Below are positions 3,861 to 58,947 of a stretch of DNA of 64,000 bases, piece by piece. The DNA comes from Malacoraja senta (Eukaryota). The stretch covers positions 1,054,001-1,118,000 of the forward strand of contig CM075996.1 in assembly GCA_038087875.1 (NCBI GenBank), given 5' to 3'. The stretch's first letter is position 1; each line of letters begins with the position of its first letter. Made by a program: the position numbers and the translations under genes. The notes below the pieces were generated by a model. It was not told the DNA's origin. It did not search any database and saw only the letters and a program-made list of their open reading frames with translations.

Positions 3861-4169
3861 CCCGAGGGTGACCCCTCGCACAAGGGAAGGTCCACTCTCC
3901 CAGGGGGCAACATGAGTTCAGGGGGAAAGGGAGATGTTGGTACTACTGCGTATAACACTAGCAATATTGGTTTATCCCCAAAGAACCGCAGATGCCAGTT
4001 TACAAAACAAGACACAAAGTACTGGAGTAACACAACCGGTCAATCTACAAAAAAAGTGCAGAGTGAGAAGGAATTTCTTGCTCCGTCTGGTGGTGCAGAT
4101 TTCTGTACCCTTCACCTCACAGCAGCAGGGAGAAAAGAAGAAGGAATGACCAGTCTGTTTGTTAAATTT

Positions 4170-4590
4170 GTTATGAAGGCCAACATGCCATTCGCTTTCT
4201 TCACTGCCTGCTGTACCTGCAAGCTTACTTTCAGTGACTGATGAACAAGGACACCCAGATCTTGTTGTACTTCCCCTTTTCCTAACTTGACACCATTCAG
4301 ATAATAATCTGCCTTCCTGTTCTTGCCACCAAAGTGGATAACCTCACATTTATCCACATTAAACTGCACCTGCCCACTCACCCAACCTGTCCAAGTCACC
4401 CTGCATTCTCATAGCATTGAGGATGTAGGGTGACTTGGACATTCCAGTGAATACAAGCCCAGTCGACCCATTCTTTCATCATATGTCAGTCCCGCCATCT
4501 CAGGAATTAACCTGTTGAACCTACGCTGCACTCCCTCAATAGCAAGAATGTCCTACCTCAAATTAGGAGACCAAAACTGCACACAATACC
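4170..4590 (-). mobile_element. Rearranged CR1 RT fragments
   Basis: ORF 4112..4399 (QFNVDKCEVIHFGGKN...QQAVKKANGMLAFI). A second CR1 segment at 4442-4590 is out of order. Confidence 0.85.
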
Positions 4591-8547: not shown

Positions 8548-8832
8548 ACAATAGAAAATAGGTGCAGGAGTAGGCCATTCGGCCCTTCGAGCCAGCACCC
8601 CAATCAGTACCCCGTTCCTGCCTTCTCCCCATATCCCCTGACTCCGCTATTTTTAACAGCCCTATCTAGCTCTCTCTTGAAAGCTTCTAGAGAACCTGCC
8701 TCCACTGCCCTCTGAGGCAGAGAATTCCACAGACTCACCATCTCTGTGAGAAAAAGTGTTTCCTCATCTCCGTTCTAAATGGCTTACTCCTTATTCTTAA
8801 ACTGTGGCCCCTGGTTCTGGACTCCCCCCAAC
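8548..8832 (-). mobile_element. CR1 3' end fragment
   Basis: atagaaaataggtgcaggagtaggccattcggcccttcgagcc is the reverse complement of the 3' UTR seen at 16690-16745. Confidence 0.85.
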
Positions 8833-9436
8833 TTTTGTATAAGAATTATTTATTCTTTTTGACAAATTGTGCATTCTGCAGATCTGCAATTTGGCGCTTC
8901 AAAGTATCAAACCAACAATTTAGTCATGTGGTTGAGAAGCATCATTTAGAATAATGGTCAAAATATTTCCAAATCTACTGTGGAGTTGATTCAATCAAAT
9001 GAAGATCTTAAGGTGTTACAGGGACAGTGGTGTTTCCATTGGTGTCATTTTTAATATTTGTTTCTCATGCTCAACTTTTCTGGATCAAATAGATGTATTG
9101 CATAAAGTCCCTTTAATTGTTCTTGGGTTTTATCTTTATGTTCTTGTTGTAGTCAGCCTTGTCATTTGTCTTGGTAAGGCTCGAAACTAGCCTTTTATGC
9201 AAAGGAATTGCTGCTCACTATGAATCCAATTGCACTGTTCTTAAAGTTGCTTTAAAATTTGAACACATACCTTTTTGAATTTTGCGACCAGTTACTGCAG
9301 TCTGCTTTTTGATTAGATTCCCTCTGCCATATTTTTTCTATGAGGAAGGTTGCAATCATATGATTGAACTGTTAATGTTACCGCCTAATTAATCAGTGGA
9401 TGTCATGGTTTCACAGAGGTGGAGGATACCTCAGAG

Positions 9437-11194: not shown

Positions 11195-11510
11195 ATGCCA
11201 CAGGAGAAAGAAGGCAATGTGACTGTAGTTGTCCGGATCAGACCTCAGAATCATCGAGAATTGGAAACCGAAAGCCATGCTGTTACACAAATGGTGGATG
11301 AAAATGTCCTGGTCTTTGACCCACAGGAAGAAATTAATGACATGTTTTCAGGAGCTAAGTTCAGAGATCGGGGCGTAACATGTCGGAAAAGGAAAGACCT
11401 GAAATTTGTATTTGACAGAGTTTTTAATGAAAACTCTACCCAACTAGAACTGTTTGAGTTCACAACTAAACAAATTTTGGAAGGAGTTTTGAATGGATAC
11501 AATTGCTCAG
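11195..11510 (+). CDS. KIF18B: Coding exon 1 (motor N-terminus, MPQEKEGNVTVVVRIRP...NGYNCS)
   Basis: Acceptor near 11139 or 11145, ATG at 11195, donor CAG|GTAAGC, phase 1. Confidence 0.92.
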
Positions 11511-11544
11511 GTAAGCGTTAAAGCTGCAGGTATTGGTTGAAAGC

Positions 11545-12130
11545 GGTACCCGGACGTGGCGTCGAAGGACAAGAAGCCGGAGCAAAGAAGTCAAAGCCAA
11601 ATAATCAAATTGAAACTAAGCCGAAATGCCAAATAACCAAAAGCATACGAAGCCGAAACGTCAACAAACCGAAAGCATACAAAGCCGAAACGCCAACAAA
11701 CCGAAAGCATACAAAGCCGAAACGCCAACAAACCGAAAGGCTGCGTCGCCTAAAAGCCAACGAACCGAATGCCGCTCTGCCGAAAAGTCAAATCACGGAC
11801 ATGACGTCGCCGGGGGGCGGGACCTGTCAGCGATTGTTCCAGACCCCTGCGTCCATTACATCACTGGCCGTTGGAGACGGGAGGGTGGGGGTCATTTTCC
11901 CATACAAGCCATTATTTGACTTTTCGGCAGAGCGGCATTCGGTTAGTTGGCTTGTAGGCGACGCAACCTTTCGGTTAGTTGGCTTTTCGGCGTCCCGCCC
12001 TTTTGGTTCGTTGGCGTTTTGGCTTCGTATGCTTTCGGTTATTTGGCGTTTCGGCTTCGTTTCCATTTGGCTATTTGGCTTTGACTTCTTTGCTCCGGCT
12101 TCTCGTCCTTCGACGCCACGTCCGCACACG
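11545..12130. mobile_element. Foldback/MULE-like non-autonomous DNA transposon with long repeat-built TIRs
   Basis: Arms 11551-11793 and 11914-12124 are reverse complements. TSD gttgaaagc at 11536-11544 and 12131-12139. Confidence 0.85.
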
Positions 12131-12478
12131 GTTGAAAGCATTGAACCCATGTAGCTCCAATGTTGCAATAAAACTGTATTTGTACTGAGTGAAGTTAGCC
12201 AGCTCAAGCCCATTTATACAACTACAGATACTTTTTTTGATGTGAACAATTTGTAATGGTGTTTCTGCACTGTATATATTTCTTACTGTACTCTAAGCAT
12301 CTTTATTATTTGACAACATTAATTATGTGTTGTATGAGAGGCTAAATGTGATAGTTTTTTCATTTTAATTCCAAGGATAATGGTCTCTTCTACACAACGT
12401 TCAGAGTTTTTGTTGAACCTTAAATGTGCATGCTTTGTAATATATAGTATAATGCTCCATGGTCTAGAACAAGTTAAA

Positions 12479-12614: not shown

Positions 12615-12819
12615 AGAATAAGTTAAATTCTTTGTGGTTATTTACAGAAGTCTTGCAATTGACCTGTTAGTGTGTCTGGGCCATTTCCCTCGGGGTTGGA
12701 AAATCTTTGAAAATCAGACTAAAATACTGAGGCACTAAGTGAATACAGCTGAGTAAACCATTGCCATATTGAGTGGTGCTTAGATTGCTTCATGCACTAC
12801 CTGAATGATAGTATATACT

Positions 12820-13545
12820 CCAACACCACAGGAGACAGGCAAGTGGATCACGGTTGGGAGAGGCAAGGGGCACAGGCAGGGACTAGAGAGTACCCCGGTG
12901 GCTGTACACCTTGACAATAAGTACTCCTGTTTGAGCACTGTTGGGGTGGACAGCCTACCTGGGGGTAGCGACAGCGGCCGGGCCTCCGGTATAGAGACCG
13001 GTCCTGTTGCTCAGAAGGGTAAGGGAAAGAAGAGGAGGGCAATATTAATAGGGGACTCTATAGTTAGGGGGTCAGACAGGCGATTCTGTGGACGCAGTCG
13101 GGAGACCCGGATGGTAGTTTGCCTCCCTCGTGCCGGGGTCTGTGATGTGTCTCAACGTGTCCAAGACATCCTGAAAGGGCAGGGAGAGGAGCCCGAAGTC
13201 GTGATACATATAGGTACCAATGACATAGGTAAAAAAAGAGAAGAGGTCCTGAAAGGAGAATTTAGGGAGTTAGGAGGGGAGTTAAAGAGAAGGACAGCGA
13301 AGGTAACAATCTCGGGATTACTGCCTGTGCCACGCGACAGTGAGAGTAGGAATGGAGCGAGGTGGAGGATAAATGCGTGGCTGAAGGACTGGTGCAGAAG
13401 GCAGGGATTCAAATTTCTGGATCATTGGGACCTCTTTTGTGGAAGGTACGACCTGTACAAAAAGGATGGGTTGCACTTGAACCTGAGGGGGACCGATATC
13501 CTGGCGGGGAGATCTGCAAAGGCTACTGGGGAGACTTTAAACTAG
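12820..13545 (+). CDS. CR1 ORF1 C-terminal part, SGNH/GDSL esterase domain
   Basis: IGDSIV, HIGTND and DGLHLN blocks. Confidence 0.9.
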   Translation, partial: PTPQETGKWITVGRGKGHRQGLESTPVAVHLDNKYSCLSTVGVDSLPGGSDSGRASGIETGPVAQKGKGKKRRAILIGDSIVRGSDRRFCGRSRETRMVVCLPRAGVCDVSQRVQDILKGQGEEPEVVIHIGTNDIGKKREEVLKGEFRELGGELKRRTAKVTISGLLPVPRDSESRNGARWRINAWLKDWCRRQGFKFLDHWDLFCGRYDLYKKDGLHLNLRGTDILAGRSAKATGETLN

Positions 13546-16500
13546 AATGGTTGGGGGGAGGGACTCAAATAGAGAATGCTATTAGACAGTGTGTGAGGCA
13601 GGAGGCAGAGAAGGAAAGCACTCAGACCCAACATGTAGGGGGGAAAGAAGAAAACAATAATAAACAGAGAATAAGAGGTGGTGGGGTTCTTAAATGGGTG
13701 AGCAGAGAAACAGAGGGGTGCAAAATGCGGGCGGAAGCAATAGGTAGCAAGGTGAAAAGTAAAAGTGGCAGGCAGACAAATCCAGGGCAAAAATCAAAAA
13801 GAGCCACTTTCCAACATAATTGTATAAGGGGTAAGAGCGTTGTAAAAACAAGCCTGAAGGCTTTGTGTCTCAATGCAAGGAGCATTCGTAATAAGGTCGA
13901 TGAGTTGAACGTGCAGATAGCAATTAATGATTATGATATAGTTGGGATCACGGAGACATGGCTCCAGGGTGACCAAGGCTGGGAGCTGAACATCCAGGGA
14001 TATTCAATATTCAGGAGGGATAGAGAGAAAGGAAAAGGAGGTGGGGTAGCGTTGCTGGTTAGAGAGGAGATTAACGCAGTGGAAAGGAAGGACATTAGCT
14101 TGGAGGATGTGGAATCGGTATGGGTAGAGCTACGAAATACTAAGGGGCAGAAAACGCTGGTGGGTGTTGTGTACAGGCCACCTAGCAGTAGTAGTGAAGT
14201 TGGGGATGGCATCAAACAGGAAATTAGAAATGCGTGCAACAAAGGCAAAACAGTTATAATGGGTGACTTCAATCTACATATAGATTGGGTGAATCAAATT
14301 GGCAGGGGTGCTGAGGAAGAGGATTTCTTGGAATGTATGAGGGATAGTTATCTAAACCAACATGTAGAGGAACCAACGAGAGAGCAGGCTATTCTAGACT
14401 GGGTATTGAGTAATGAGGAAGGGTTAGTTAGCAGACTTGTTGTGCGTGCCCCCTTGGGCAAGAGTGACCATAATATGGTTGAGTTCTTCATTAGGATGGA
14501 GAGTGACATTGTTAATTCAGAAACAACGGTTCTGAACTTAAAGAAAGGTAACTTTGAGGATATGAGACGTGAATTGGCCAAGATTGACTGGCAATTAGTT
14601 CTAAAAGCGTTGACGGTGGATATGCAATGGAAGGCATTTAAAGACTGCATGGATGAACTACAAAAAATGTTCATCCCAGTTGGGCAAAAGAATAAATCAG
14701 GGAAGGTAGTGCATCCGTGGATAACAAGGGAAATCAGGGATAGTATCAAAGCAAAAGATGTTGCGTACAAATTAGCCAGAAAAAGCAGCATACCAGAGGA
14801 CTGGGAGAAATTCAGAGACCAGCAGAGGAGGACAAAGGGCTTAATTAGGAAAGTGAAAATAGATTATGAAAGGAAACTGGCAGGGAACATAAAAACTGAC
14901 TGCAAAAGTTTTTATAGATATGTGAAGAGAAAGAGATTAGTTAAAACAAATGTAGGTCCCTTGCAGTCAGAAACAGGTGAATTGATCATGGGGAACAAGG
15001 ATATGGCGGACCAATTGAATAACTACTTTGGTTCCGTCTTCACTAAGGAAGACATAAATAATCTGCCGGAAATAGCAGGGGGCCGCGGGTCAAAGGAGAT
15101 GGAGGAACTGAGTGAAATCCAGGTTAGTCGGGAAGTGGTGTTGGGTAAATTGAATGGATTAAAGACCGATAAATCACCAGGGCCAGATAGGCTGCATCCC
15201 AGAGTACTTAAGGAAGTAGCTCCAGAAATAGTGGATGCATTAGTGATAATTTTTCAAAATTCTTTAGATTCTGGAGTAGTTCCTGAGGATTGGAGGGTAG
15301 CAAATGTAACCCCACTTTTTAAGAAGGGAGGGAGAGAGAAAACGGGGAATTACAGACCAGTTAGTCTAACATCGGTAGTGGGGAAACTGCTAGAGTCAGT
15401 TATTAAAGATGGGATAGCAGCACATTTGGAAAGTGGTGAAATCATTGGACAAAGTCAGCATGGATTTACGAAAGGTAAATCGTGTCTGACGAATCTTATA
15501 GAATTTTTCGAGGATGTAACTAGTAGAGTGGATAGGGGAGAACCAGTGGATGTGTTGTATCTGGACTTTCAGAAGGCTTTCGACAAGGTACCACATAAGA
15601 GATTAGGATACAAACTTAAATCACACGGTATTGGGGGTTCAGTATTGATGTGGATAGAGAACTGGCTGGCAAACAGGAAGCAAAGAGTAGGAGTAAACGG
15701 GTCCTTTTCACAATGGCAGGCTGTGACTAGTGGGGTACCGCAAGGCTCAGTGCTGGGACCCCAGCTATTTACAATTTATATTAATGATCTGGACGAGGGA
15801 ATTGAAAGCAACATCTCCAAGTTTGCGGATGACACTAAGCTGGGGGGCAGTGTTAGCTGTGAGGAGGATGCTAGGAGACTGCAAGGTGACTTGGATAGGC
15901 TGGGTGAGTGGGCAAATGTTTGGCAGATGCAGTATAATGTGGATAAATGTGAGGTTATCCACTTTGGTGGCAAAAACGGGAAGGCAGACTATTATCTAAA
16001 TGGTGGCCGATTAGGAAATGGGGAGGTGCAGCGAGACCTGGGTGTGATGGTACACCAGTCATTGAAAGTAGGCATGCAGGTGCAGCAGGCAGTGAAGAAA
16101 GCGAATGGTATGTTGGCCTTCATAGCAAGAGGATTTGAGTATAGGAGCAGGGAGGTTCTACTGCAGTTGTACAGGGTCTTGGTGAGACCACACCTGGAGT
16201 ATTGCGTACAGTTTTGGTCTCCAAATCTGAGGAAGGACATTATAGCCATAGAGGGAGTGCAGAGAAGGTTCACCAGACTGATTCCTGGGATGTCAGGACT
16301 TTCATATGAAGAAAGACTGGATAGACTTGGCTTATACTCGCTAGAATTTAGGAGATTGAGAGGGGATCTTATAGAAACGTACAAAATTCTTATGGGGTTG
16401 GACAGGCTAGATGCAGGAAGATTGTTCCCGATGTTGGGGAAGTCCAGGACAAGGGGTCACAGCTTAAGGATAAGGGGGAAATCCTTTAAGACCGAGATGA

Positions 16501-16661
16501 GGAAAAACTTTTTCACACAGAGAGTGGTGAATCTCTGGAACTCTCTGCCACAGAGGGTAGTTGACGCCAGTTCATTGGCTATATTTAAGAGGGAGTTAGA
16601 TGTGGCCCTTGTGGCTAAAGGGATCAGGGGGTATGGAGAGAAGGCAGGTACGGGATACTGA
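13536..16661 (+). CDS. CR1 ORF2: APE endonuclease + reverse transcriptase (first in-frame Met at 13725; frame open from before the ORF1 stop)
   Basis: NARS, ITETW, MGDFN and SDH (APE); YRPVSLTS, QHGF, DFQKAFDKV, GVPQGSVLGP and FADD (RT). No stops in the frame. Confidence 0.93.
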   Translation, partial: FKLEWLGGGTQIENAIRQCVRQEAEKESTQTQHVGGKEENNNKQRIRGGGVLKWVSRETEGCKMRAEAIGSKVKSKSGRQTNPGQKSKRATFQHNCIRGKSVVKTSLKALCLNARSIRNKVDELNVQIAINDYDIVGITETWLQGDQGWELNIQGYSIFRRDREKGKGGGVALLVREEINAVERKDISLEDVESVWVELRNTKGQKTLVGVVYRPPSSSSEVGDGIKQEIRNACNKGKTVIMGDFNLHIDWVNQIGRGAEEEDFLECMRDSYLNQHVEEPTREQAILDWVLSNEEGLVSRLVVRAPLGKSDHNMVEFFIRMESDIVNSETTVLNLKKGNFEDMRRELAKIDWQLVLKALTVDMQWKAFKDCMDELQKMFIPVGQKNKSGKVVHPWITREIRDSIKAKDVAYKLARKSSIPEDWEKFRDQQRRTKGLIRKVKIDYERKLAGNIKTDCKSFYRYVKRKRLVKTNVGPLQSETGELIMGNKDMADQLNNYFGSVFTKEDINNLPEIAGGRGSKEMEELSEIQVSREVVLGKLNGLKTDKSPGPDRLHPRVLKEVAPEIVDALVIIFQNSLDSGVVPEDWRVANVTPLFKKGGREKTGNYRPVSLTSVVGKLLESVIKDGIAAHLESGEIIGQSQHGFTKGKSCLTNLIEFFEDVTSRVDRGEPVDVLYLDFQKAFDKVPHKRLGYKLKSHGIGGSVLMWIENWLANRKQRVGVNGSFSQWQAVTSGVPQGSVLGPQLFTIYINDLDEGIESNISKFADDTKLGGSVSCEEDARRLQGDLDRLGEWANVWQMQYNVDKCEVIHFGGKNGKADYYLNGGRLGNGEVQRDLGVMVHQSLKVGMQVQQAVKKANGMLAFIARGFEYRSREVLLQLYRVLVRPHLEYCVQFWSPNLRKDIIAIEGVQRRFTRLIPGMSGLSYEERLDRLGLYSLEFRRLRGDLIETYKILMGLDRLDAGRLFPMLGKSRTRGHSLRIRGKSFKTEMRKNFFTQRVVNLWNSLPQRVVDASSLAIFKRELDVALVAKGIRGYGEKAGTGY

Positions 16662-19292
16662 GTTGGATGATCAGCCATGATCATATTGAATGGCGGTGCA
16701 GGCTCGAAGGGCCGAATGGCCTACTCCTGCACCTATTTTCTATGTATCTATGTATCTATGTATATATGCTAGTATAACCACTGGTACTTTTATTAATGAC
16801 ACTTAAGGACTTAAGGAACACCTATTATCGTCTTCACCTGCTGCATGTCACTCTAATTACAAATTACTTATGCCCCTCACAATTATATATACCCCGACAA
16901 GGTCCCCCCTCAGCCTCCTACGTTTCTTGAGAATAAGTATTGATGAGAAATATTCATTTAACATCTCGCCCATCTGCTCTGTCTCCACACATGACAACCA
17001 CGTCGATCCTATTCTTCCCCCTAGTTATCCTTTTGCTCTTAATATACTTGTACAATCTCTTGGGATTCCCCTTTTCCTCTATCATCACCCAGAGATCCTC
17101 ACCCTGCCAGCCTTGCCCATCACTTTAACATGTTGTAGTTGAATTCTCCCTATTTTACTTTAAATAAAATCCTGCTTGCAAGAAGTCCTTTCATCTTCAA
17201 ACATGTTTCCCCAATCAACCCTTTCCAGCATTGTTTTTGTCCTAGATTCCAGCATCTGTAGTCTCATTTCTCATTAAAAAAATGATTTTGTTCCGCTGTG
17301 ACATGTTTTTGCATTTTGAATGGAGTTTCTGTCTCTTGGATTTTAAATTGGTATCCTCTGCCTTCCATCACTTCTCTGGAGCCATCTGGTCCATTGTCTA
17401 CCATCCCCCTTCCCAATCTCTCCCTCCCTTGCCCTTTCCCTCTTGGACCCATTTCATTCTGCTTTGCCAGTTTCTCTTGTTTTTGCCCTCTATCTCTCTG
17501 ATTACTCCGAGATTGGCATTTGGAGGTGGATACATTCATTTAGCTGATGTGGGGAATTGTTGTTACTGAACTCGTATCCTTTGTGGCTATTTAAATTTTT
17601 ATCGTCATCTTTAATCTCCTAAACAGCGACTTAAAGCCATGGCCCAACCTCTACTTGCTGTCATTCCTCAATATGCCACATATCAATGAGAATCAGCATC
17701 GTCTTGGCAGGCTTGTTAAACAAAGATTTGTCATTTCACTCATTTGAGAAACTGCCCTTTTTAAGTCAATTAAATAGTCAAAATGCTTTGTGTTATGCAT
17801 CAAAAATGTGAGGAGAACATGGAGGCCTTTTGAAAATGTCAGGCACATTAGCTGTTAAAACTTAAACTCAGTTGGGTTAAAGTTGTTTCAGTTTAGTGAT
17901 GAATTTTGAAATACAGTCTGTCAATGATCAGCAATATAAATATGTTTGCAATTAATCCTGGAATTTTGGACTGCAATCAAATGTTAACCCTTTCCACAGT
18001 CCTACTTTATATTTACAACCCTGAGGCAACGTTATGATGGAAAAGATTACTGTCTGAAAGTAGTTTAAGCAGATAGCATGTCACCAGTGACATAAGTATT
18101 TTTGTGCTCCTGTGTTTTGATAGCTTCAGTCAAAGTAGCACAAAGTTTATTCCTTATTAATTCTAACTTTCCACCAGAGGGGTAAAATTTTTACCAAATT
18201 TTATAGACCAGATATCCATTACTCACAATAAGCATAAATCTGGAGGTGAAAGCTCAGAATGAAACAGATTTACAAGCCACAAGTATCACTGGTGCAATTC
18301 TTCTCCATTGCTTGAAGAATACTTCTCCAAAGTAGAATCTATAAGGGCTGTTGTTTCACTTGAGCAGATTGAAATGTGATGGAGTTCATTAATCTAAAGT
18401 AACCCGCAAGTTCATTGAGTGCAGCTTCAGGGAAAGCAGGTACAATTTGCACAGTGTATGATTTTGCTGACCATACAATATTATCTTTGTTGAGTGTGCC
18501 TCTTACCATTTTCTGTTGTATGACTGTATAGTGTTGCTCATTTGAACAGAGTATCATGTTGGATGAAGCCTTCTTCTGACCTTTAATGAATATTCAACTG
18601 AGACAGACAAGAGTAACTTCGAAATAAACTCAGATTAGGCGTGAATTTCTTCAGCTGTGCCTCAGCCAGTATTCTGGGTCTTCAGAAGATTCAAGCTTCA
18701 TTCCAGAGCATAATTAAATGTCTACTTCAGTGGTGCACAAATATTTTTGAGAGGGCCAGATTTATGATTCAAACTACATCCAAGAGTCATTCAGGCAGGT
18801 TCTCTGAAGAGAGTTAAAATTTAATGTCAATAACCTTTTCACATAGTCATTTTTAATAAAATTTTCCATTTTTATTTCAGACTTTCAAGATTCTGCATTT
18901 GGATTACTAAATTTTAGCCATGTTTACAGATACATATGCTGCAATTCTTGTTGCTGAAATCAGCCTAACAATTTCTGGTGCTAAAAAATAATTGCTGAAA
19001 TATCTAGCAGATCTAATCAACATCAGTAGAATAACAAACAGTTACCTTTTGGGGCCCATGATCTTGCATTAGATTCGATGATAGAATGTAATTGGGACAA
19101 CCAAACATGTCAAATTCATTTTGAAATTAATTTTTGAAGGTGAAAATGTTTCTATTTCCACAAATACATTTGTAAACTAATGAAGACCGACACTAGCGAC
19201 AGCGTGTACGGAAAACCTATGCTTGTTTCTATCTACATGCAACTGCTGTAATATCTTACATGAGAGTTTCAAATATATCTTTCATTTTTCAG

Positions 19293-28714: not shown

Positions 28715-31394
28715 TGTGTAGGAAGGAACTGCAGATGTTGGTTTAAACCGAAGAAGGACACAAAGCTGGAGTAACTCTGGGTCCGACAGCATCTCTGGAG
28801 AATAGGAATAGGTGAAGTTTCAGGTAGAGACCCTTCTTCAGTCTGAAAAAAAGGAATAGGTGACGTTTCAGGTAGAGACCCTTCTTCAGTCTGAAGAAGG
28901 GTCTTGGAATGTATGCGGGATAGTTATCTAAACCAACATGTAGAGGAACCAATGAGAGAGCAGGCTATTCTAGACTGGGTATTAAGTAATGAGGAAGGGT
29001 TAGTTAGCAGTCTTGTTGTGCATGCCCCCTTGGGCAAGAGTGACCATAATATGGTTGAGTTCTTCATTAGGATGAAGAGTGACATTGTTAATTCAGAAAC
29101 AATGGTTCTGAACTTAAAGAAAGGTAACTTTGAGGGTATGAGACGTGAATTGGCCAAGATTGACTGTCAATTAGTTCTAAAAGGGTTGACGGTGGATATG
29201 CAATGGAAGGCATTTAAAGACTGCATGGATGAACTACAAAAATTGTTCATCCCAGTTTGGCAAAAGAATAAATCAGGGAAGGTAGTGCATCCGTGGATAA
29301 CAAGGGAAATCAGGGATAGTATCAAAGCAAAAGATGATGCGTACAAATTAGCCAGAAAAAGCAGCATACCAGAGGACTGGGAGAAATTCAGAGACCAGCA
29401 GAGGAGGACAAAGGGCTTAATTAGGAAAGGGAAAATAGATTATGAAAGAAAACTGGCAGGGAACATAAAAACTGACTGCAAAAGTTTTTATAGGTATGTG
29501 AAAAGAAAGAGATTAGTTAAAACAAATGTAGGTCCCTTGCAGTCAGAAACAGGTGAATTGATCATGGGGAACAAGGATATGGCGGACCAATTGAATAACT
29601 ACTTTGGTTCCGTCTTCACTAAGGAAGACATAAATAATCTGCCGGAAATAGCAGGGGACCGCAGGTCAAAGGAGATGGAGGAACTGAGTGAAATCTAGGT
29701 TTGTCGGGAAGTGGTGTTGGGTAAATTGAATGGATTAAAGGCCGATAAATCACCAGGGCCAGATAGGCTGCATCCCAGAGTACTTAAGGAAGTAGCTCCA
29801 GAAATAGTGGATGCATTAGTGATAATTTTTCAAAACTCTTTAGATTCTGGAGTAGTTCCTGAGGATTGGAGGGTAGCAAACGTAACCCCACTTTTTAAGA
29901 AAGGAGGGAGAGAGAAAACGGGGAATTACAGACCAGTTAGTCTAACATCGGTAGTGGGGATACTGCTAGTCAGTTATTAAAGATGGGATAGCAGCACATT
30001 TGGAAAGTGGTGAAATCATTGGACAAAGTCAGCATGGATTTATGAAAGGTAAATCATGTCTGATGAATCTTATAGAATTTTTCGAGGATGTAACTAGTAG
30101 AGTGGATAGGGGAGAACCAGTGGATGTGTTGTATCTGGACTTTCAGAAGGCTTTCGACAAGGTCCCACATAAGAGATTAATATACAAACTTAAAGCACTT
30201 GGTATTGGGGGTTCAGTATTGATGTGGATAGAGAACTGGCTGGCAAACAGGAAGCAAAGAGTAGGAGTAAACGGGTCCTTTTCACAATGGCAGGCAGTGA
30301 CTAGTGGGGTACCGCAAGGCTCAGTGCTGGGACCCCAGCTATTTACAATTTATATTAATGAACTGGATGAGGGAATTGAAGGCAACATCTCCAAGTTTGC
30401 GGATGACACTAAGCTGGGGGGCAGTGTTAGCTGTGAGGAGGATGCTAGGAGACTGCAAGGTGACTTGGATAGGCAGGGTGAGTGGGCAAATGTTTGGCAG
30501 ATGCAGTATAATGTGGATAAATGTGAGGTTATCCACTTTGGTGGCAAAAACAGGAAAGCAGACTATTATCTAAATGGTGGCCGATTAGGAAAAGGGGAGA
30601 TGCAGCGAGACCTGGGTGTCATAGTACACCAGTCATTGAAAGTAGGCATGCAGGTGCAGCAGGCAGTGAAGAAAGCGAATGGTATGTTAGCTTTCATAGC
30701 AAAAGGATTTGAGTATAGGAGCAGGGAGGTTCTACTGCAGTTGTACAGGGTCTTGGTGAGACCACACCTGGAGTATTGCGTACAGTTTTGGTCTCCAAAT
30801 CTGAGGAAGGACATTATAGCCATACAGGGAGTACAGAGAAGGTTCACCAGACTGATTCCTGGGATGTCAGGACTTTCATATGAAGAAAGACTGGATAGAC
30901 TCGGCTTATACTCGCTAGAATTTAGGAGATTGAGAGGGGATCTTATAGAAACGTACAAAATTCTTATGGGGTTGGACAGGCTAGATGCAGGAAGATTGTT
31001 CCCAATGTTGGGGAAGTCCAGGACAAGGGGTCACAGCTTAAGGATAAGGGGGAAATCCTTTAAGACCGAGATGAGAAAAAACTTTTTCACACAGAGTGGT
31101 GAATCTCTGGAACTCTCTGCCACAGAGGGTAGTTGAGGCCAGTTCATTGGCTATATTTAAGAGGGAGTTAGATGTGGCCCTTGTGGCTAAAGGGATCAGG
31201 GGGTATGGAGAGAAGGCAGGTACGGGATACTGAGTTGGATGATCAGCCATGATCATATTGAATGGCGGTGCAGGCTCGAAGGGCCGAATGGCCTACTCCT
31301 GCACCTATTTTCTATGTATCTACGTCACCTATTCCTTTTCTCCAGAGATGCTGTCTGACCCGCTGAGTTACTCCAGCTTTGTGTGTCTATCTTC
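28715..31394. mobile_element. Palindromic Penelope-tail element split by a CR1 insertion
   Basis: Left part 28715-28905, right part 31323-31394. Degenerate TSD atgtcagatcttta/atgtcaaaccttta. Confidence 0.75.
28903..31322 (+). mobile_element. 5'-truncated CR1, same subfamily as 12818-16762, ORF2 disrupted
   Basis: Near-identical to 14326-16750 by eye. Stop at 29696-29698 and frameshifts near 29970 and 31092. Confidence 0.95.
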
Positions 31395-32957: not shown

Positions 32958-33045
32958 GTAGGATCCCTGGTTTTACTCAAATTTGATCAAGTAAAGACAT
33001 TGCTTTTAAAGATAGTTTCAGATTGCAAAAGCTGGCTAAGTATTA

Positions 33046-34966
33046 CATAGAAACATAGAAAATAGGTGCAGGAGGAGGCCATTCGGCCCTTCGAGCCAGC
33101 ACCGCCATTCATTGTGATCATGGCTGATCGTCCCCAATCAATAACCCGTGCCTGCCTTCTCCCCATATTCCTTGATTCCACTAGCCCCTCGAGCTCTATC
33201 TAACTCTCTCTTAAATCCATCCAGTGATTTGGCCTCCACTTCCCTCCGTGGCAGGGATTTCCACAAATTCACAACTCTCTGGGTGAAAACGTTTTTTCTC
33301 ACCTCAGTCTTAAATGGCCTCCCCTTTATTCTAAGACTGTGGCCCCTGGTTCTGGACTCGCCCAACATTGGGAACATTTTTCCTGCACCTAGCTTGTCCA
33401 GTCCTTTTTATAATTTTATATGTTTCTATAAGATCCCCCTTGTCCTTCTAAATTCCAGTGTCTTTTCAATCATTCCTTGTATGACAGTCCCGCCATCCCA
33501 GGGATCAATCTCGTGAACCTACGCTGCACTGCCTCAATCACAAGGATGTCCTTCCTCAAATTAGGAGACCAAAACTGTATGCAATACTCCAGATGTGGTC
33601 TTACCAGAGCCCTACACAACTGCAGAGGAACCTCTCTACTCCTATACTGAAATCCTCTTGTTATGAAGGCCAACATTCCATTAGCTTTCTTCACTACCTG
33701 CTGTACCTGCACGCCAACTTTCAGTGACTGATGTACAAGAACACCCAGGTTTCGCTGAACCTCCCCCTTACCTAACCTAACCCCATTGAGATAATAATCT
33801 GCTCCCTTATTTTTGCCACCAAAGTGGATAACCTCACATTTATCTATATTATACTGCATCTGCCACGCATCTGCCCACTCACTCAACCTGTCCAGGTCAC
33901 CCTGCAACCTCCTAACATCCTCTTCACCGTTCACACTGCCACCTAGCTTTCTTTGTGTCATCCGCAAACTTACTAGTGTTGCTCCTAATTCCCACTTTCA
34001 AATTATTAATATATAGTAAACAGTTGCAGCCCCAACACCGAGCCTTGCGGCATTCCACTCGCCACTGCCTGCCATTCTGAAAAGGACCCATTCACTCCTA
34101 CTCTTTGCTTCCTGTCTGCCAACCAGTTTTCTATCCACGTCAACACCCTACCACCAATACTATGTGCTCTAATTTTAGTCACCAGTCTCCCGTGCGGGAC
34201 CTTATCAAAGGCTTTCTGAAAGCCTAGATACACTACATCAACTGGCTCCCCTTCATCCATTTTACTTGTCACATCCTCAAAAAATTCCAGAAGATTACTC
34301 AAGCATGATTTTCCTTTCATAAATCCATGCTGACTTGGACTAATCCTTTTACTGCTATCTAAATGCCCCATTATTACCTCTTTAATAATTGACTCCAGCA
34401 TCTTTCCCACCACTGAAGTCAGGCTAACTGGTCTGTCATTCCCTGTTTTCTCTCTCGCTCCTTTCTTGAAAAGTGGGATACCATTAGCTATCCTCCAATC
34501 CACAGGAACTGATCCTGAATCTATTGAACATTGGAAAACGATCACAAATGCGTCCACTATTTCTAGAGCCACCTCCCTGAGGACCCTGGGATGCAGTCCA
34601 TCAGGCCCCGTGGATTTATCATCCTTCAGTCCCATTAGCCTACCCAATACTATCTCTCGCCTAATGAAAATTTCTTTCAGTTCCTCTACCCCCTTAGATC
34701 CGGAGTCCTCCAGTACTTCTGGGAGATTGTTTGTGTCTTCCTTAGTGAAGACGGATCGGAAGTACCTGTTCAACTCTTCTGCCATTTCCTTGTTCCCCAT
34801 AATAATTTCACCCGTGCCTGCCTTCAAGGGACCCACATTTGACTTTGCTATTCTTTTTCCCTTAACATATCTAAAGAAACTTTTACTGTCCTTTATATTC
34901 CTGGCCAGCTTCCCTTCGTACTTCATCTTTTCAGCCCGTATTGCCCGTTTTGTTTCTTTCTGTTGT
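33046..34966 (-). mobile_element. 5'-truncated CR1 (related subfamily), disrupted RT
   Basis: ORFs 34006..34926, 33470..33967 and 33138..33377; tail (catagaaa)n. Confidence 0.92.
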
Positions 34967-56702: not shown

Positions 56703-58947
56703 AATATATCCTTCCAAAGTCCAGAGAATACAGATCTCTTTAGCTGTTCATGACAGGACGGTCCACGTATCCCAGGGATGAGTCTGGCGTATACCATTGG
56801 GTATGTGACAAGTGCCACTAGGACCTTTCTTTATTAAGACCAAACTTCTGCACAATACTCCAGGTGTGGCCTCATCAATACCTTGCACCATTGTAACAGC
56901 ACTTCCCTATTTCTCAACTCCAATACTATTGCAATAAAGACCAACGTGTCATTTGCCTTTTTACCTACTAGCTACATCTGCCTGTTAGCTTTTTGTGATT
57001 TCTGTACAAAAACATCCAAATCTCTCTACATTCTGCCCATCTGCAATCTTTCTCCATTTAGACAATAGTCTGCTTCAGTTTTCCTTTCTTAACATGCATA
57101 ACTTCACACATTCCCACATTGAGCTCCATGAGCCAAACTTTCACCCACTCACTCAACCTATATGTAGCCTGTAGCGGAGTCCAAATATCCTCACCACAAC
57201 ATGCTGTCCCACCTGTTTCCGTCAGACTCTGCCTCCTCCTTCACATTGTGAACAAGTGAGAGCCAAGAGCTGATCCTAAGGATGTTCCACCAATTGCACC
57301 CTCCCTGCCTGGAAAAGGGCCATGGATTTTGGCTCTGCTGCATGATAACAAATCTTTATTCCATGCTGATGCCAGAAGCTTTTACCTTCTGCACCAGCCT
57401 CTTGTGTGGCACCTCATCAAAAGCCTCTGGATATGTGACCTGCTACACGTCCTCATGGTTTTGTACCTGTTTAAATTGTAAAGATTATGCTGCCCTAACA
57501 GTTAAGCAGAGGGTTGAAAGTTTGCACTGTACGTTCAATATGCTTGGACAACCGAGAAATGCTTTGAACTGTTTCATTTCATTCATTTGCAGTAAATTAA
57601 ATATTATAAATGAAATAGTTCTCAAAACATTTCTCTACAGTCCAAGCTTGTTGAACGTACAGTGCAATCTTTCAACCCTTTGCTTTCAACAATATCTTTG
57701 CTAAGACCTATCGCGAAGTTCCTGCCCCTTAAGAAGTTTGTCTTGTTAGCTATGACACACTTAGCAACATTCATGTGTTTAGTAATTATGATTAAAGGTC
57801 TCGAAGTAGCAGGCAAGTTCCACGTAATTCAGCAGATCAGAGTAGGAAGATTGGAATGAACTGGTTGTACGACATTTGCAGACTTGCAAAGTGAAAACCC
57901 CAACAGCCTTTATTTTTACTGTGGTGGGGGGGAGGGGGTGTGGGTGTGGGGAGTAGGGTGGGTGTGGGGGGAGGGGGGTGGGGGGGATGGTGGGGGGGGG
58001 AGAGGGCGGGCGCGTGCGTGCATTTCTGACCAGGCATACGTTAAAAATGTGTCCCGTGCATTGAAGGAACACTCACCAAAGGTCACAGCCATGGCTTGTA
58101 GCGCACTCTGAATAATCTGCCCTCTTACTTTCCTATTTCCTTTTCTCATTACTCGTTCCCTTTTCTCTTCTCTACCTTCGGGGAGGAGATACAGGAGCTA
58201 GAAAGCTTGAATGTCCACACTTAATTTCAGCATCTTCCTCACTGCCATCCGATTCCTGCACCAATTTAAGTCAATCAGGCTTAATCCCAGACTTAACAGT
58301 TTCCAGTGTCCTTTTAAAGTTAGTGCAATTAGATGTGACTCAAATGCCAAAAAAATTATCAGCACTTCATGAAGACCACAAACACATTTTTACTGTGAGT
58401 CTTTGTGGTTGTATCAGGGAATGTTATGCAGAAGTAATTCATCCCACTAAACAACAATCTGAAATATTGTTTAGTGTTTTCTAGGTTTAGTATTGGCAGC
58501 AAACAGCTGTCTGCAACTGCAAGTATCCCTCGACATTATGAATTATGCTATGATCTCATGTGGACTGTTGCAAACATTTCCAATGTCAAGTAATACCACA
58601 AAATCAGCCACAGATTCATGAAACAAACATCATCTAAATATAAAATTAACTTTTTAAACCAGTTACCCTTCTATAAAACGAGCCAAGTCCTTCAACATTG
58701 CAGTTCCATTGGTTCTGGCAACTGTGCTCTTCATGTACAGCCCCTGATATGGGAGCAGGAGCGGTCCATAAACCCCGGCTCCTGCACAGCCATTGAATGT
58801 GCACAGCATCAACCTTATGCCCAGGCATAGGTTATATTTGTTATTTGTCCTCGTCTTCTTTCTTGCCAATGATTGAAGGAAATGACCTACCTCATCTTTC
58901 AATACACCCAATCATTGAATCGCCCAGAACAGACAACTCCAAAGATT

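What the first reader, a model, noticed from the sequence alone, without database searches (positions are those of the whole stretch)
13530..13860. Candidate -1 programmed ribosomal frameshift (U_UUA_AAC) fusing CR1 ORF1 esterase to ORF2
ORF1 ends ...GAG ACT TTA AAC TAG (13531-13545). T_TTA_AAC at 13536-13542 is a canonical X_XXY_YYZ slippery heptamer, the one coronaviruses use. It is in the correct phase and immediately before the stop codon. The -1 frame (TTT AAA CTA GAA TGG = FKLEW) is the ORF2 frame, and it stays open for ~100 linker codons to the APE domain and on to 16661. A few nt downstream is GGTTGGGGGGAGGG, which could form a G4 or pair with CCCAACAT at 13627-13634 as a stimulator. 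Non-LTR ORF2s are usually thought to be made by re-initiation. A gag-pol-style esterase-APE-RT fusion would be a different expression strategy for this LINE clade. I have not checked whether it has been reported. An in-frame Met at 13725 offers the conventional alternative.
Basis: partly seen in the sequence, partly recalled or inferred. Interest (0 to 1): 0.8.

Follow-up and report, generated by a model that had tools for sequence, protein, structure and literature searches.

The report
Conserved frameshift signal in CR1 LINEs
A jumping gene (CR1-type LINE) in this cartilaginous-fish-like genome ends its first gene with a textbook "slip back one letter" signal. The signal is kept at exactly that spot in every related element I could read, so these elements probably make their copying enzyme fused to the first protein, as retroviruses do.

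Summary
T_TTA_AAC (13536-13542) lies in the ORF1 phase and directly abuts the ORF1 stop (TAG, 13543-13545). The APE-RT ORF2 is in the -1 frame and is open from 13362 to 16661.

Comparative evidence supports the -1 frameshift reading:
- All 12 esterase-ORF1 junctions I could read as DNA have X_XXA_AAC immediately before the stop, with ORF2 in the -1 frame. These come from the window, a skate, a shark and nine unassigned metagenome or contaminant contigs, with ORF1 identity down to 30%.
- Ten carry TTTAAAC, one GGGAAAC and one AAAAAAC. The base before the heptamer always matches X, although the amino acid it helps encode varies.
- The final codons are always TTA and AAC, whereas other conserved Leu and Asn columns use mixed codons.
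- Of 95 distant ORF1 representatives, 46 end in LN, GN or KN. Lizard, snake and frog proteins are among those ending in LN.
- No ORF2-frame AUG is conserved.

A G-run starts 9-10 nt after the heptamer in all ten TTTAAAC loci.

This copy is 5'-truncated and chimeric, so it is a relic of the signal rather than an active source. I found no report of this mechanism in the papers I could read. Other readers of this scan flagged the same signal in at least eight other pieces of this genome. Frameshifting itself is untested.

The parts
12817..13545 (+). ORF1 remnant encoding the SGNH/GDSL esterase domain. It is 5'-truncated; the ATG at 12805 is flanking DNA that happens to be in frame.
   Evidence: Pfam Lipase_GDSL_2 E=6.5e-14. 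Homology to full-length L001 ORF1 starts at 12817, equivalent to L001 ORF1 nt 208. ORF1 relatives are about 311 aa.
13536..13542 (+). Slippery heptamer T_TTA_AAC in the ORF1 phase.
   Evidence: Sequence. The same position holds TTTAAAC in 10 loci, GGGAAAC in L009 and AAAAAAC in L010. No variant above 0.2% share is listed in two species' contig sets.
13543..13545 (+). ORF1 stop codon TAG, directly abutting the heptamer.
   Evidence: The stop (TAG or TAA) abuts the heptamer in all 12 loci.
13550..13563 (+). Conserved G-rich tract (GGTTGGGGGGAGGG), a candidate 3' stimulator of unknown mode.
   Evidence: A run of 4-7 G (five or more in nine of the ten) starts 9-10 nt after the heptamer in all ten TTTAAAC loci, including L003 and L017 at 34-35% ORF1 identity. 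A two-tier G4 is predicted in 4 of 10. No Watson-Crick partner exceeds shuffles.
13536..16661 (+). ORF2 reading frame (-1 relative to ORF1) from the slip site to its stop. It runs through the linker, APE (about 13887-14471) and RT (about 15330-15974).
   Evidence: Translation, Pfam. The frame is open for 1039 codons after the junction.
13546..13886 (+). Purine-rich linker between the junction and the APE domain. It is open only in the ORF2 frame.
   Evidence: 73% purine over the first 150 nt. The 0 frame ends at the ORF1 stop (13543-13545) and the +1 frame closes 40 nt after it. Common copy variants are mostly non-synonymous, but none makes a stop.
13725..13727 (+). First ORF2-frame ATG after the ORF1 stop, the conventional alternative start.
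   Evidence: The position of the first in-frame ATG in other loci varies: +2, +38, +86, +107, +197, +257, +536 or none. The homologous codon in L007 encodes Thr.
13697..13699 (+). Recombination join between two CR1 families within the linker.
   Evidence: 12817-13696 is 86% identical to L001. 13700-15354 is 95% identical to L007, whose own ORF1 is only 54% identical. Loose ends and a depth dip occur at 13696.
16662..16763 (+). CR1-type 3' UTR: an inverted repeat (GGTGCAGG...CCTGCACC) followed by octamer repeats (TTCTATGT, then ATCTATGT twice, 16738-16761).
   Evidence: Sequence. The same tail is found in the second copy at 31215-31320.

Best explanation
The junction is a programmed -1 ribosomal frameshift site inherited from the active master of an esterase-type CR1 LINE. 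Proposed mechanism: ribosomes translating ORF1 reach U_UUA_AAC with tRNA-Leu on UUA in the P site and tRNA-Asn on AAC in the A site. Most ribosomes continue, meet UAG as the next codon and release the esterase protein ORF1p. A fraction slip back one base, re-pairing on UUU_AAA. They then read CUA instead of the stop and continue through a purine-rich linker into the APE and RT domains. This would yield an ORF1p-ORF2p fusion, analogous to retroviral Gag-Pol, and would set a high ORF1p to ORF2p ratio. The abutting stop codon and the G-run 9-10 nt downstream are the likely enhancers. What is shown: the anatomy of the site, its nucleotide-level conservation, the covariation across three heptamer types, the -1 frame relation and the open linker. 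What is inferred: that slippage occurs, its efficiency, the roles of the stop and the G-run, and that the fusion protein is the active form. This particular copy is 5'-truncated and chimeric, so it carries the signal as a relic.
For: (1) All 12 esterase-ORF1 junctions read as DNA have X_XXA_AAC abutting the stop, with ORF2 in the -1 frame open across the site. These are W, L001 (Leucoraja), L002 (Stegostoma), L003, L005-L010, L017 and L018. In L018 the -1 frame closes about 14 codons downstream after a private 1-nt deletion, and ORF2 continues in another frame. L017 and L018 were found through ORF2 similarity alone, so they were not selected for their junction. (2) Three canonical heptamers occupy the same position: TTTAAAC, GGGAAAC (L009) and AAAAAAC (L010). 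The third base of the preceding codon always equals X, while the encoded residue varies among T, G, D, H, Q and S. (3) Synonymous sites are fixed. The terminal Asn is AAC in 10 of 10 aligned loci, while three other invariant Asn columns mix AAT and AAC. The terminal Leu is TTA in 8 of 8, while other conserved Leu columns use 2-6 codons. (4) The last two residues are conserved although the preceding 12 or so are not. Of 95 representatives clustered at 50% identity, 46 end in LN, GN or KN, against about 1% expected from typical amino-acid frequencies (my estimate, not computed). Another 11 have KN at the same distance followed by a short extension. Lizard, snake and frog ORF1s end in LN. (5) No ORF2-frame AUG is conserved in position. 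In two decayed copies there is none before the APE motif. (6) Within the family there is no listed variant above 0.2% in the heptamer or stop, no indel listed for the two DNA runs, and no variant at 10% share or more that creates a stop in the linker. (7) PHD-type CR1-group elements (L012, L013) lack the heptamer and have ORF2 in the +1 frame, so the signal travels with the esterase ORF1 module.
Against: There is no experimental evidence: no trans-frame peptide, no reporter assay and no ribosome footprints. No conserved pseudoknot or hairpin of the usual kind was found. Only L010 has a clear hairpin. The G-run could be conserved because it encodes Gly-Gly-Gly at the start of the ORF2 frame. 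Every intact element also has an ORF2-frame AUG between the stop and the APE domain, so reinitiation cannot be excluded. L007 even has a UAAUG stop-start overlap. Within-family conservation of the junction is no greater than that of some neighbouring stretches. Many of the loci are related by descent, so they are not 12 independent observations. Several key older papers could not be read.
Confidence: 0.78

Rival explanations
1. ORF2 is made by termination-reinitiation or another unconventional initiation after ORF1 translation, as proposed for human L1 and silkworm SART1. Under this view the conserved junction sequence serves that process, or serves as an RNA-binding site, rather than tRNA slippage.
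For: This is the field's default for bicistronic LINEs (review PMC2881922). Every intact element has an ORF2-frame AUG 38-182 nt after the stop and before the APE domain. L007 has UAAUG. The G-run contains UGGGA-like motifs in some loci.
Against: Reinitiation gives no reason for a strict X_XXA_AAC pattern in the ORF1 phase. It also does not explain covariation of the base before the heptamer, fixation of TTA and AAC at synonymous sites, or replacement by two other canonical slippery heptamers. AUG position is not conserved, and UAAUG occurs in 1 of 12 loci.
Confidence: 0.14
2. The conserved C-terminal Leu-Asn is a protein-level feature of the esterase, for example a C-terminal signal. The heptamer would then be a by-product.
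For: LN is the most common ending.
Against: Protein-level selection would allow six Leu codons, two Asn codons and any preceding base. Only TTA, AAC and a matching preceding base are seen. GN and KN endings replace LN in other lineages, using exactly GGA AAC and AAA AAC. The preceding residues are not conserved.
Confidence: 0.03
3. The heptamer is a chance occurrence in this copy and has no function.
For: TTTAAAC is not rare in the window: 20 occurrences against 14.3 expected.
Against: The same position and phase are seen in 12 of 12 loci down to 30% ORF1 identity. The background rate of in-phase canonical heptamers in ORF1 is about 0.4% per position.
Confidence: 0.01

Closest known systems
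Gag-Pol -1 programmed frameshifting of retroviruses and many LTR retrotransposons (review PMC5009743)
   Same: A canonical X_XXY_YYZ heptamer lies at the end of the upstream structural or accessory ORF. The polymerase ORF is in the -1 frame. The expected outcome is a minority fusion protein that fixes the stoichiometry.
   Different: The element here is a non-LTR LINE. The upstream protein is an SGNH esterase, not Gag. There is no protease to separate the fusion. The zero-frame stop abuts the heptamer. No pseudoknot or hairpin is conserved; a G-run is conserved instead.
Coronavirus ORF1a/1b frameshift site U_UUA_AAC
   Same: The heptamer is identical and has the same A-site codon, AAC (Asn).
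   Different: Coronaviruses rely on a three-stem pseudoknot a few nt downstream, and the zero-frame stop lies within or just after the spacer (my knowledge). Here Rfam finds nothing and no base-paired structure is conserved.
SART1 UAAUG translational coupling and human L1 unconventional ORF2 translation (cited in PMC2881922 and PMC5009743)
   Same: Both involve a bicistronic LINE RNA in which ORF2 synthesis depends on ribosomes that translated ORF1.
   Different: In those systems ORF2p is made as a separate protein by reinitiation, and no slippery heptamer is involved. Here UAAUG is present in only 1 of 12 loci and the conserved feature is the heptamer.
HeT-A gag frameshift in Drosophila telomeric non-LTR elements (PMC5009743)
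   Same: It is a non-LTR retrotransposon whose expression is reported to need a frameshift.
   Different: The HeT-A shift lies within gag, and the element has no RT. It is not an ORF1-ORF2 fusion by a canonical -1 heptamer.
ZfL2-1 esterase ORF1p of zebrafish (PDB 4c1b; PMC3905857)
   Same: It has a homologous SGNH esterase domain (E = 8e-26) and the same ORF1 type.
   Different: It belongs to the L2 lineage. DGLHP-type relatives in my survey end differently (QAL, LYK, NMQ), so they may lack the signal. The paper does not mention frameshifting. I could not read its junction DNA.

Membership tests
Canonical -1 programmed ribosomal frameshift site | X_XXY_YYZ heptamer in the zero-frame phase | tested here: met
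   T_TTA_AAC at 13536-13542 is in the ORF1 phase. The same holds in all 12 loci.
Canonical -1 programmed ribosomal frameshift site | The downstream ORF is in the -1 frame and is open across the slip site | tested here: met
   The -1 frame is open from 13362 to 16661. ORF2 is in the -1 frame in all 12 loci. L018 has a private 1-nt deletion downstream.
Canonical -1 programmed ribosomal frameshift site | The heptamer is conserved beyond what the protein requires | tested here: met
   TTA in 8 of 8 and AAC in 10 of 10 loci, against mixed codons at control columns. The preceding base covaries with X across three heptamer types.
Canonical -1 programmed ribosomal frameshift site | A 3' stimulatory RNA structure lies 5-9 nt downstream | tested here: inconclusive
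   A G-run is conserved at fixed spacing. No Watson-Crick structure is conserved. The window-specific stem gives z = -1.29. A two-tier G4 is predicted in 4 of 10 loci. L010 has a 10-bp hairpin.
Canonical -1 programmed ribosomal frameshift site | A trans-frame protein product is demonstrated | not testable with these tools
   No proteomic or reporter data are available. The only run guessed to be RNA (X17) gave 4 contig pieces.
CR1-clade LINE with esterase (type IV) ORF1 | ORF2 contains APE endonuclease and reverse transcriptase domains | tested here: met
   Exo_endo_phos E = 5e-13 and RVT_1 E = 6e-32.
CR1-clade LINE with esterase (type IV) ORF1 | ORF1 contains an SGNH/GDSL esterase domain | tested here: met
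   Lipase_GDSL_2 E = 6.5e-14. Matches the ZfL2-1 ORF1p structure 4c1b at E = 8e-26.
CR1-clade LINE with esterase (type IV) ORF1 | CR1-type 3' end: hairpin plus octamer microsatellite | tested here: met
   GGTGCAGG...CCTGCACC followed by TTCTATGT and ATCTATGT repeats at 16738-16761. That this tail is a CR1 hallmark rests on my knowledge.
CR1-clade LINE with esterase (type IV) ORF1 | The RT groups with CR1 rather than L2 in an RT phylogeny | not tested
   No reference RT set was available. The ORF2 C-terminal motif resembles chicken CR1 as I recall it from memory only.
Termination-reinitiation (SART1 type) | Overlapping stop-start (UAAUG) or a conserved AUG at the junction | tested here: not met
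   UAAUG occurs only in L007. The first ORF2-frame AUG ranges from +2 to +536 or is absent.

The most novel reading that the evidence does not exclude
A -1 frameshift at X_XXA_AAC abutting the ORF1 stop is the ancestral and general way that esterase-type CR1-group LINEs express ORF2, from sharks to lizards and in some unassigned metagenomic lineages. These LINEs would then make an ORF1p-APE-RT fusion as their active enzyme. The frameshift would use an unusual stimulator, the adjacent stop plus a G-run, rather than a pseudoknot. The ORF1-heptamer-stop-G-run block would move as a unit between ORF2 lineages by recombination.
Probability: 0.6. Interest if true: 0.85.

Novelty: new variant of a known kind. 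Interest (0 to 1): 0.8.

Why it matters
How LINEs translate ORF2 from a bicistronic RNA is a long-standing open question, and the accepted answers are unconventional reinitiation mechanisms. A whole, widespread LINE lineage appears to carry a textbook slippery site, conserved across roughly the span of jawed vertebrates. If real, that lineage would use the retroviral Gag-Pol strategy. It would make an esterase-endonuclease-RT fusion protein, which bears on how ORF1p and ORF2p assemble on their RNA. It would also offer a simple reporter-testable system. In addition it would give a new example of -1 frameshifting in vertebrate cells, possibly with a non-canonical stimulator, and a practical rule for annotating CR1 ORF2 starts.

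Tried and rejected
It is absent in L001 and in other families. Rejected.
- Conserved hairpin or pseudoknot downstream: individual folds share no structure. RNAduplex of the G-run against the next 175 nt does not beat shuffles in any locus. Rfam gives no match.
- G-quadruplex as a universal stimulator: a two-tier G4 is predicted in only W, L006, L007 and L008. I did not adopt it as the mechanism.
- A conserved +1-frame ATG just after the stop (TAGAATGG) is present in W, L001 and L002, shifted by 3 nt in L005, and absent in L006 and L008. About 9-18% of copies lose it. It opens only a 12-16 codon ORF. Rejected.
- The search for related loci with the ORF1 alignments: A1 was too divergent. A2 gave 2 metagenome loci and nothing in the viral or bacterial collections.
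- Four encoding-contig look-ups returned no DNA. Junctions from Mobula, Mustelus, Hemitrygon and all tetrapods were therefore read only as protein C-termini.
- Read laying: raw-read run X21 laid no reads, so it is no test. X17, guessed to be RNA, gave only 4 contig pieces. One of these is a diverged copy with TAG changed to CAA and a 1-nt deletion, so it says nothing about expression.
- Kapitonov and Jurka 2003 and Kojima et al. 2005 are not held. An earlier mention of this signal there, or in other subscription papers, cannot be excluded.
Full report
**What is in the window.**
- The stretch 12817-16763 (+) is a CR1-type LINE copy. It lies downstream of a kinesin-motor-like coding exon (11195-11515, + strand; identified by eye), probably in the intron that follows.
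- ORF1 (read from 12805, stop at 13543-13545) encodes an SGNH/GDSL esterase (Pfam Lipase_GDSL_2, E = 6.5e-14).
- The -1 frame is open from 13362 to 16661. It encodes an APE endonuclease and a reverse transcriptase.
- The end of ORF1 reads GAG ACT TTA AAC TAG.
- The 3' end has an inverted repeat followed by TTCTATGT and ATCTATGT octamer repeats, which I know as the CR1 tail.
- TTTAAAC by itself is not rare in the window: 20 occurrences against 14.3 expected. The question is therefore conservation in context.

**Relatives.**
- A protein search with ORF1 found 62 relatives in skates, rays and sharks, among them Leucoraja, Mobula, Hypanus, Hemitrygon, Pristis, Narcine, Stegostoma, Mustelus and Pristiophorus.
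- Nearly all end in ...xLN, although the preceding dozen residues vary.
- I obtained junction DNA for eleven further loci:
  - L001 (Leucoraja erinacea), L002 (Stegostoma tigrinum), L005 and L007-L010 (metagenome or assembly contigs), and L006 (a contaminant contig in a "Pseudomonas aeruginosa" assembly).
  - L003.
  - L017 and L018, found through ORF2 similarity alone among eukaryotic contaminant contigs in bacterial MAGs.

**The junctions.**
- All twelve esterase-type junctions have a canonical heptamer of the form X_XXA_AAC in the ORF1 phase. It is immediately followed by TAG or TAA, and ORF2 is in the -1 frame and open across the site.
- Ten have TTTAAAC. L009 (33% ORF1 identity) has GGGAAAC, and L010 (30%) has AAAAAAC.
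- L018 differs from L017 only by a private 1-nt deletion after the G-run.

**Codon-level test.**
- The terminal Asn is AAC in 10 of 10 aligned loci. Three other invariant Asn columns are 7:3, 6:4 and 6:4 AAT to AAC.
- The terminal Leu is TTA in 8 of 8. Other conserved Leu columns use two to six codons, and TTA is rare among them.
- The codon before the heptamer encodes T, G, D, H, Q or S. Its third base is always T with TTA, G with GGA and A with AAA.
- This covariation is what tandem tRNA slippage requires. Neither protein-level selection nor reinitiation predicts it.
- In-phase canonical heptamers elsewhere in these ORF1s number 11 in about 2,920 positions.

**Breadth.**
- A profile search of 1.84 billion representatives found 14,885 esterase-ORF1 relatives.
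- Of the top 150, 95 have an intact tail. Of those, 46 end in LN (32), GN (10) or KN (4).
- Another 11 have KN at the same distance from the DGLHL motif, followed by about 12 residues.
- Several of the rest end in FFR or GFR, which could encode U-type heptamers.
- The RRxLN group includes Anolis, Zootoca, Erythrolamprus and Ranitomeya proteins.
- These are protein-level inferences. I could not read their DNA.

**Alternative start codons.**
- The first ORF2-frame ATG after the stop lies at +182 (window), +107, +86, +38, +257, +197, +536, +2 or nowhere. No AUG is conserved.
- Met 13725 lies in a segment derived from another family, and that family (L007) has Thr there.
- Every intact element still has some AUG before the APE domain, and L007 has UAAUG. 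Reinitiation therefore remains a formal rival.

**Within-family variation.**
- I laid contigs from two species on 13350-13850: 11,862 pieces for X1 and 2,493 for X7.
- Many variants have 10-99% share in the flanks. In the heptamer and stop, none is listed above 0.2%.
- No indel is listed for these two runs, and no variant at 10% share or more creates an ORF2-frame stop.
- The invariant block around the junction is no longer than some other variant-free stretches. This evidence is compatible with the claim but not strong by itself.

**Stimulator.**
- A G-run begins 9-10 nt after the heptamer in all ten TTTAAAC loci, including the distant L003 and L017.
- No Watson-Crick partner is conserved.
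- A two-tier G4 starting 6 nt after the heptamer is predicted in four loci but is not possible in others.
- L010 instead has a 10-bp hairpin 11 nt downstream.
- The abutting stop may also contribute by pausing ribosomes. That is my inference.

**Association with the ORF1 type.**
- L012 and L013 are CR1-group elements with a (weak) PHD-type ORF1. In them ORF2 is in the +1 frame with a 50-59 nt overlap, and there is no heptamer.
- The window copy is itself chimeric. 12817-13696 matches the L001-type family at 86%. 13700 onward matches L007-type ORF2 at 95%, while the two ORF1s are only 54% identical.
- The join lies just beyond the junction module. This suggests that ORF1, heptamer, stop and G-run travel together.

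**Status of this copy.** It lacks about the first 69 ORF1 codons and any 5' UTR, so it is not an autonomous source. Its ORF2 is intact, and a 97.5% identical fragment lies at 28902-31325, so the family is young.

**Literature.**
- The frameshifting review PMC5009743 mentions only HeT-A, TART and L1 among non-LTR elements.
- The LINE review PMC2881922 describes ORF2 translation as unconventional initiation.
- The ORF1 survey PMC4120745, the esterase structure paper PMC3905857, and the CR1 papers PMC13343379 and PMC4316615 do not mention frameshifting.
- Targeted searches found nothing else.
- Older subscription papers were not readable.

**Earlier notes of this scan.** At least eight other first-stage notes, and one follow-up, flag the same U_UUA_AAC junction in other pieces of this genome. 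They agree with my reading but are not independent evidence.

**Verdict.** It remains unproven experimentally. It is a new variant of a known kind: Gag-Pol-style -1 frameshifting in a non-LTR LINE lineage with an atypical stimulator.

Noticed in passing
window 12817-13696 versus 13700-15354: The CR1 copy is a chimera of two families. Its ORF1, junction and 150 nt of linker are L001-like (86%). The rest of the linker and ORF2 are L007-like (95%), although L007's own ORF1 is only 54% identical. Loose ends at 13696 in two species show other copies continuing straight into the APE start.
   Followed up: partly
window 11535-12139: A foldback-type element. Its inverted arms are about 187 nt long (84% complementary) and are built of 32-nt tandem units. 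It is flanked by a perfect 10-bp direct repeat, GGTTGAAAGC, which is probably a target-site duplication.
   Followed up: partly
window 11195-11515 (+): An open reading frame that resembles the N-terminal motor domain of a kinesin (MPQEKEGNVTVVVRIRPQN...) and ends at a GT splice-donor-like site. The CR1 and the foldback element lie downstream of it, probably in the intron that follows. Identified by eye only.
   Followed up: no
window 28902-31325 (+), 33044-34920 (-), and fragments near 200-860, 4168-4589, 8551-8842, 56735-57451: Further 5'-truncated CR1 ORF2 fragments. One is 97.5% identical to the studied copy; the others are 64-84% identical. None reaches the ORF1/ORF2 junction.
   Followed up: partly
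L006 (GCA_019909505.1 contig JADHER010000072.1); L011-L045: A complete CR1 LINE sits on a 4.2-kb contig of a 'Pseudomonas aeruginosa' assembly, and its ORF1 is annotated as a bacterial SGNH/GDSL hydrolase. Thirty-five further contigs in bacterial or archaeal MAGs and isolates carry CR1-group ORF2s. These look like eukaryotic contamination.
   Followed up: partly
P0024, P0051, P0052: NCBI gene models named '40S ribosomal protein S24 isoform X2' (Pristis) and 'transmembrane protein 204 isoform X3/X5' (Mobula) match CR1 ORF1 esterase sequence. This suggests exonisation or mis-annotation.
   Followed up: no
L002, L006, L008 junctions: The sequence GGGTTTAAAC gives two overlapping in-phase canonical heptamers, G_GGT_TTA and T_TTA_AAC.
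   Followed up: no
L012 2480-2541; L013 271-323: CR1-group elements with a PHD-like ORF1 have ORF2 in the +1 frame, overlapping ORF1 by 50-59 nt with no canonical heptamer. This points to a different, unexplained ORF2 expression arrangement.
   Followed up: partly
tails (for example P0119, P0125, P0161, P0163, P0200): A subset of distant esterase ORF1s end in FFR, GFR or GF. These endings could encode U-type slippery heptamers (U_UUU_UUC or G_GGU_UUC) one codon before the stop. Not checked at the DNA level.
   Followed up: no
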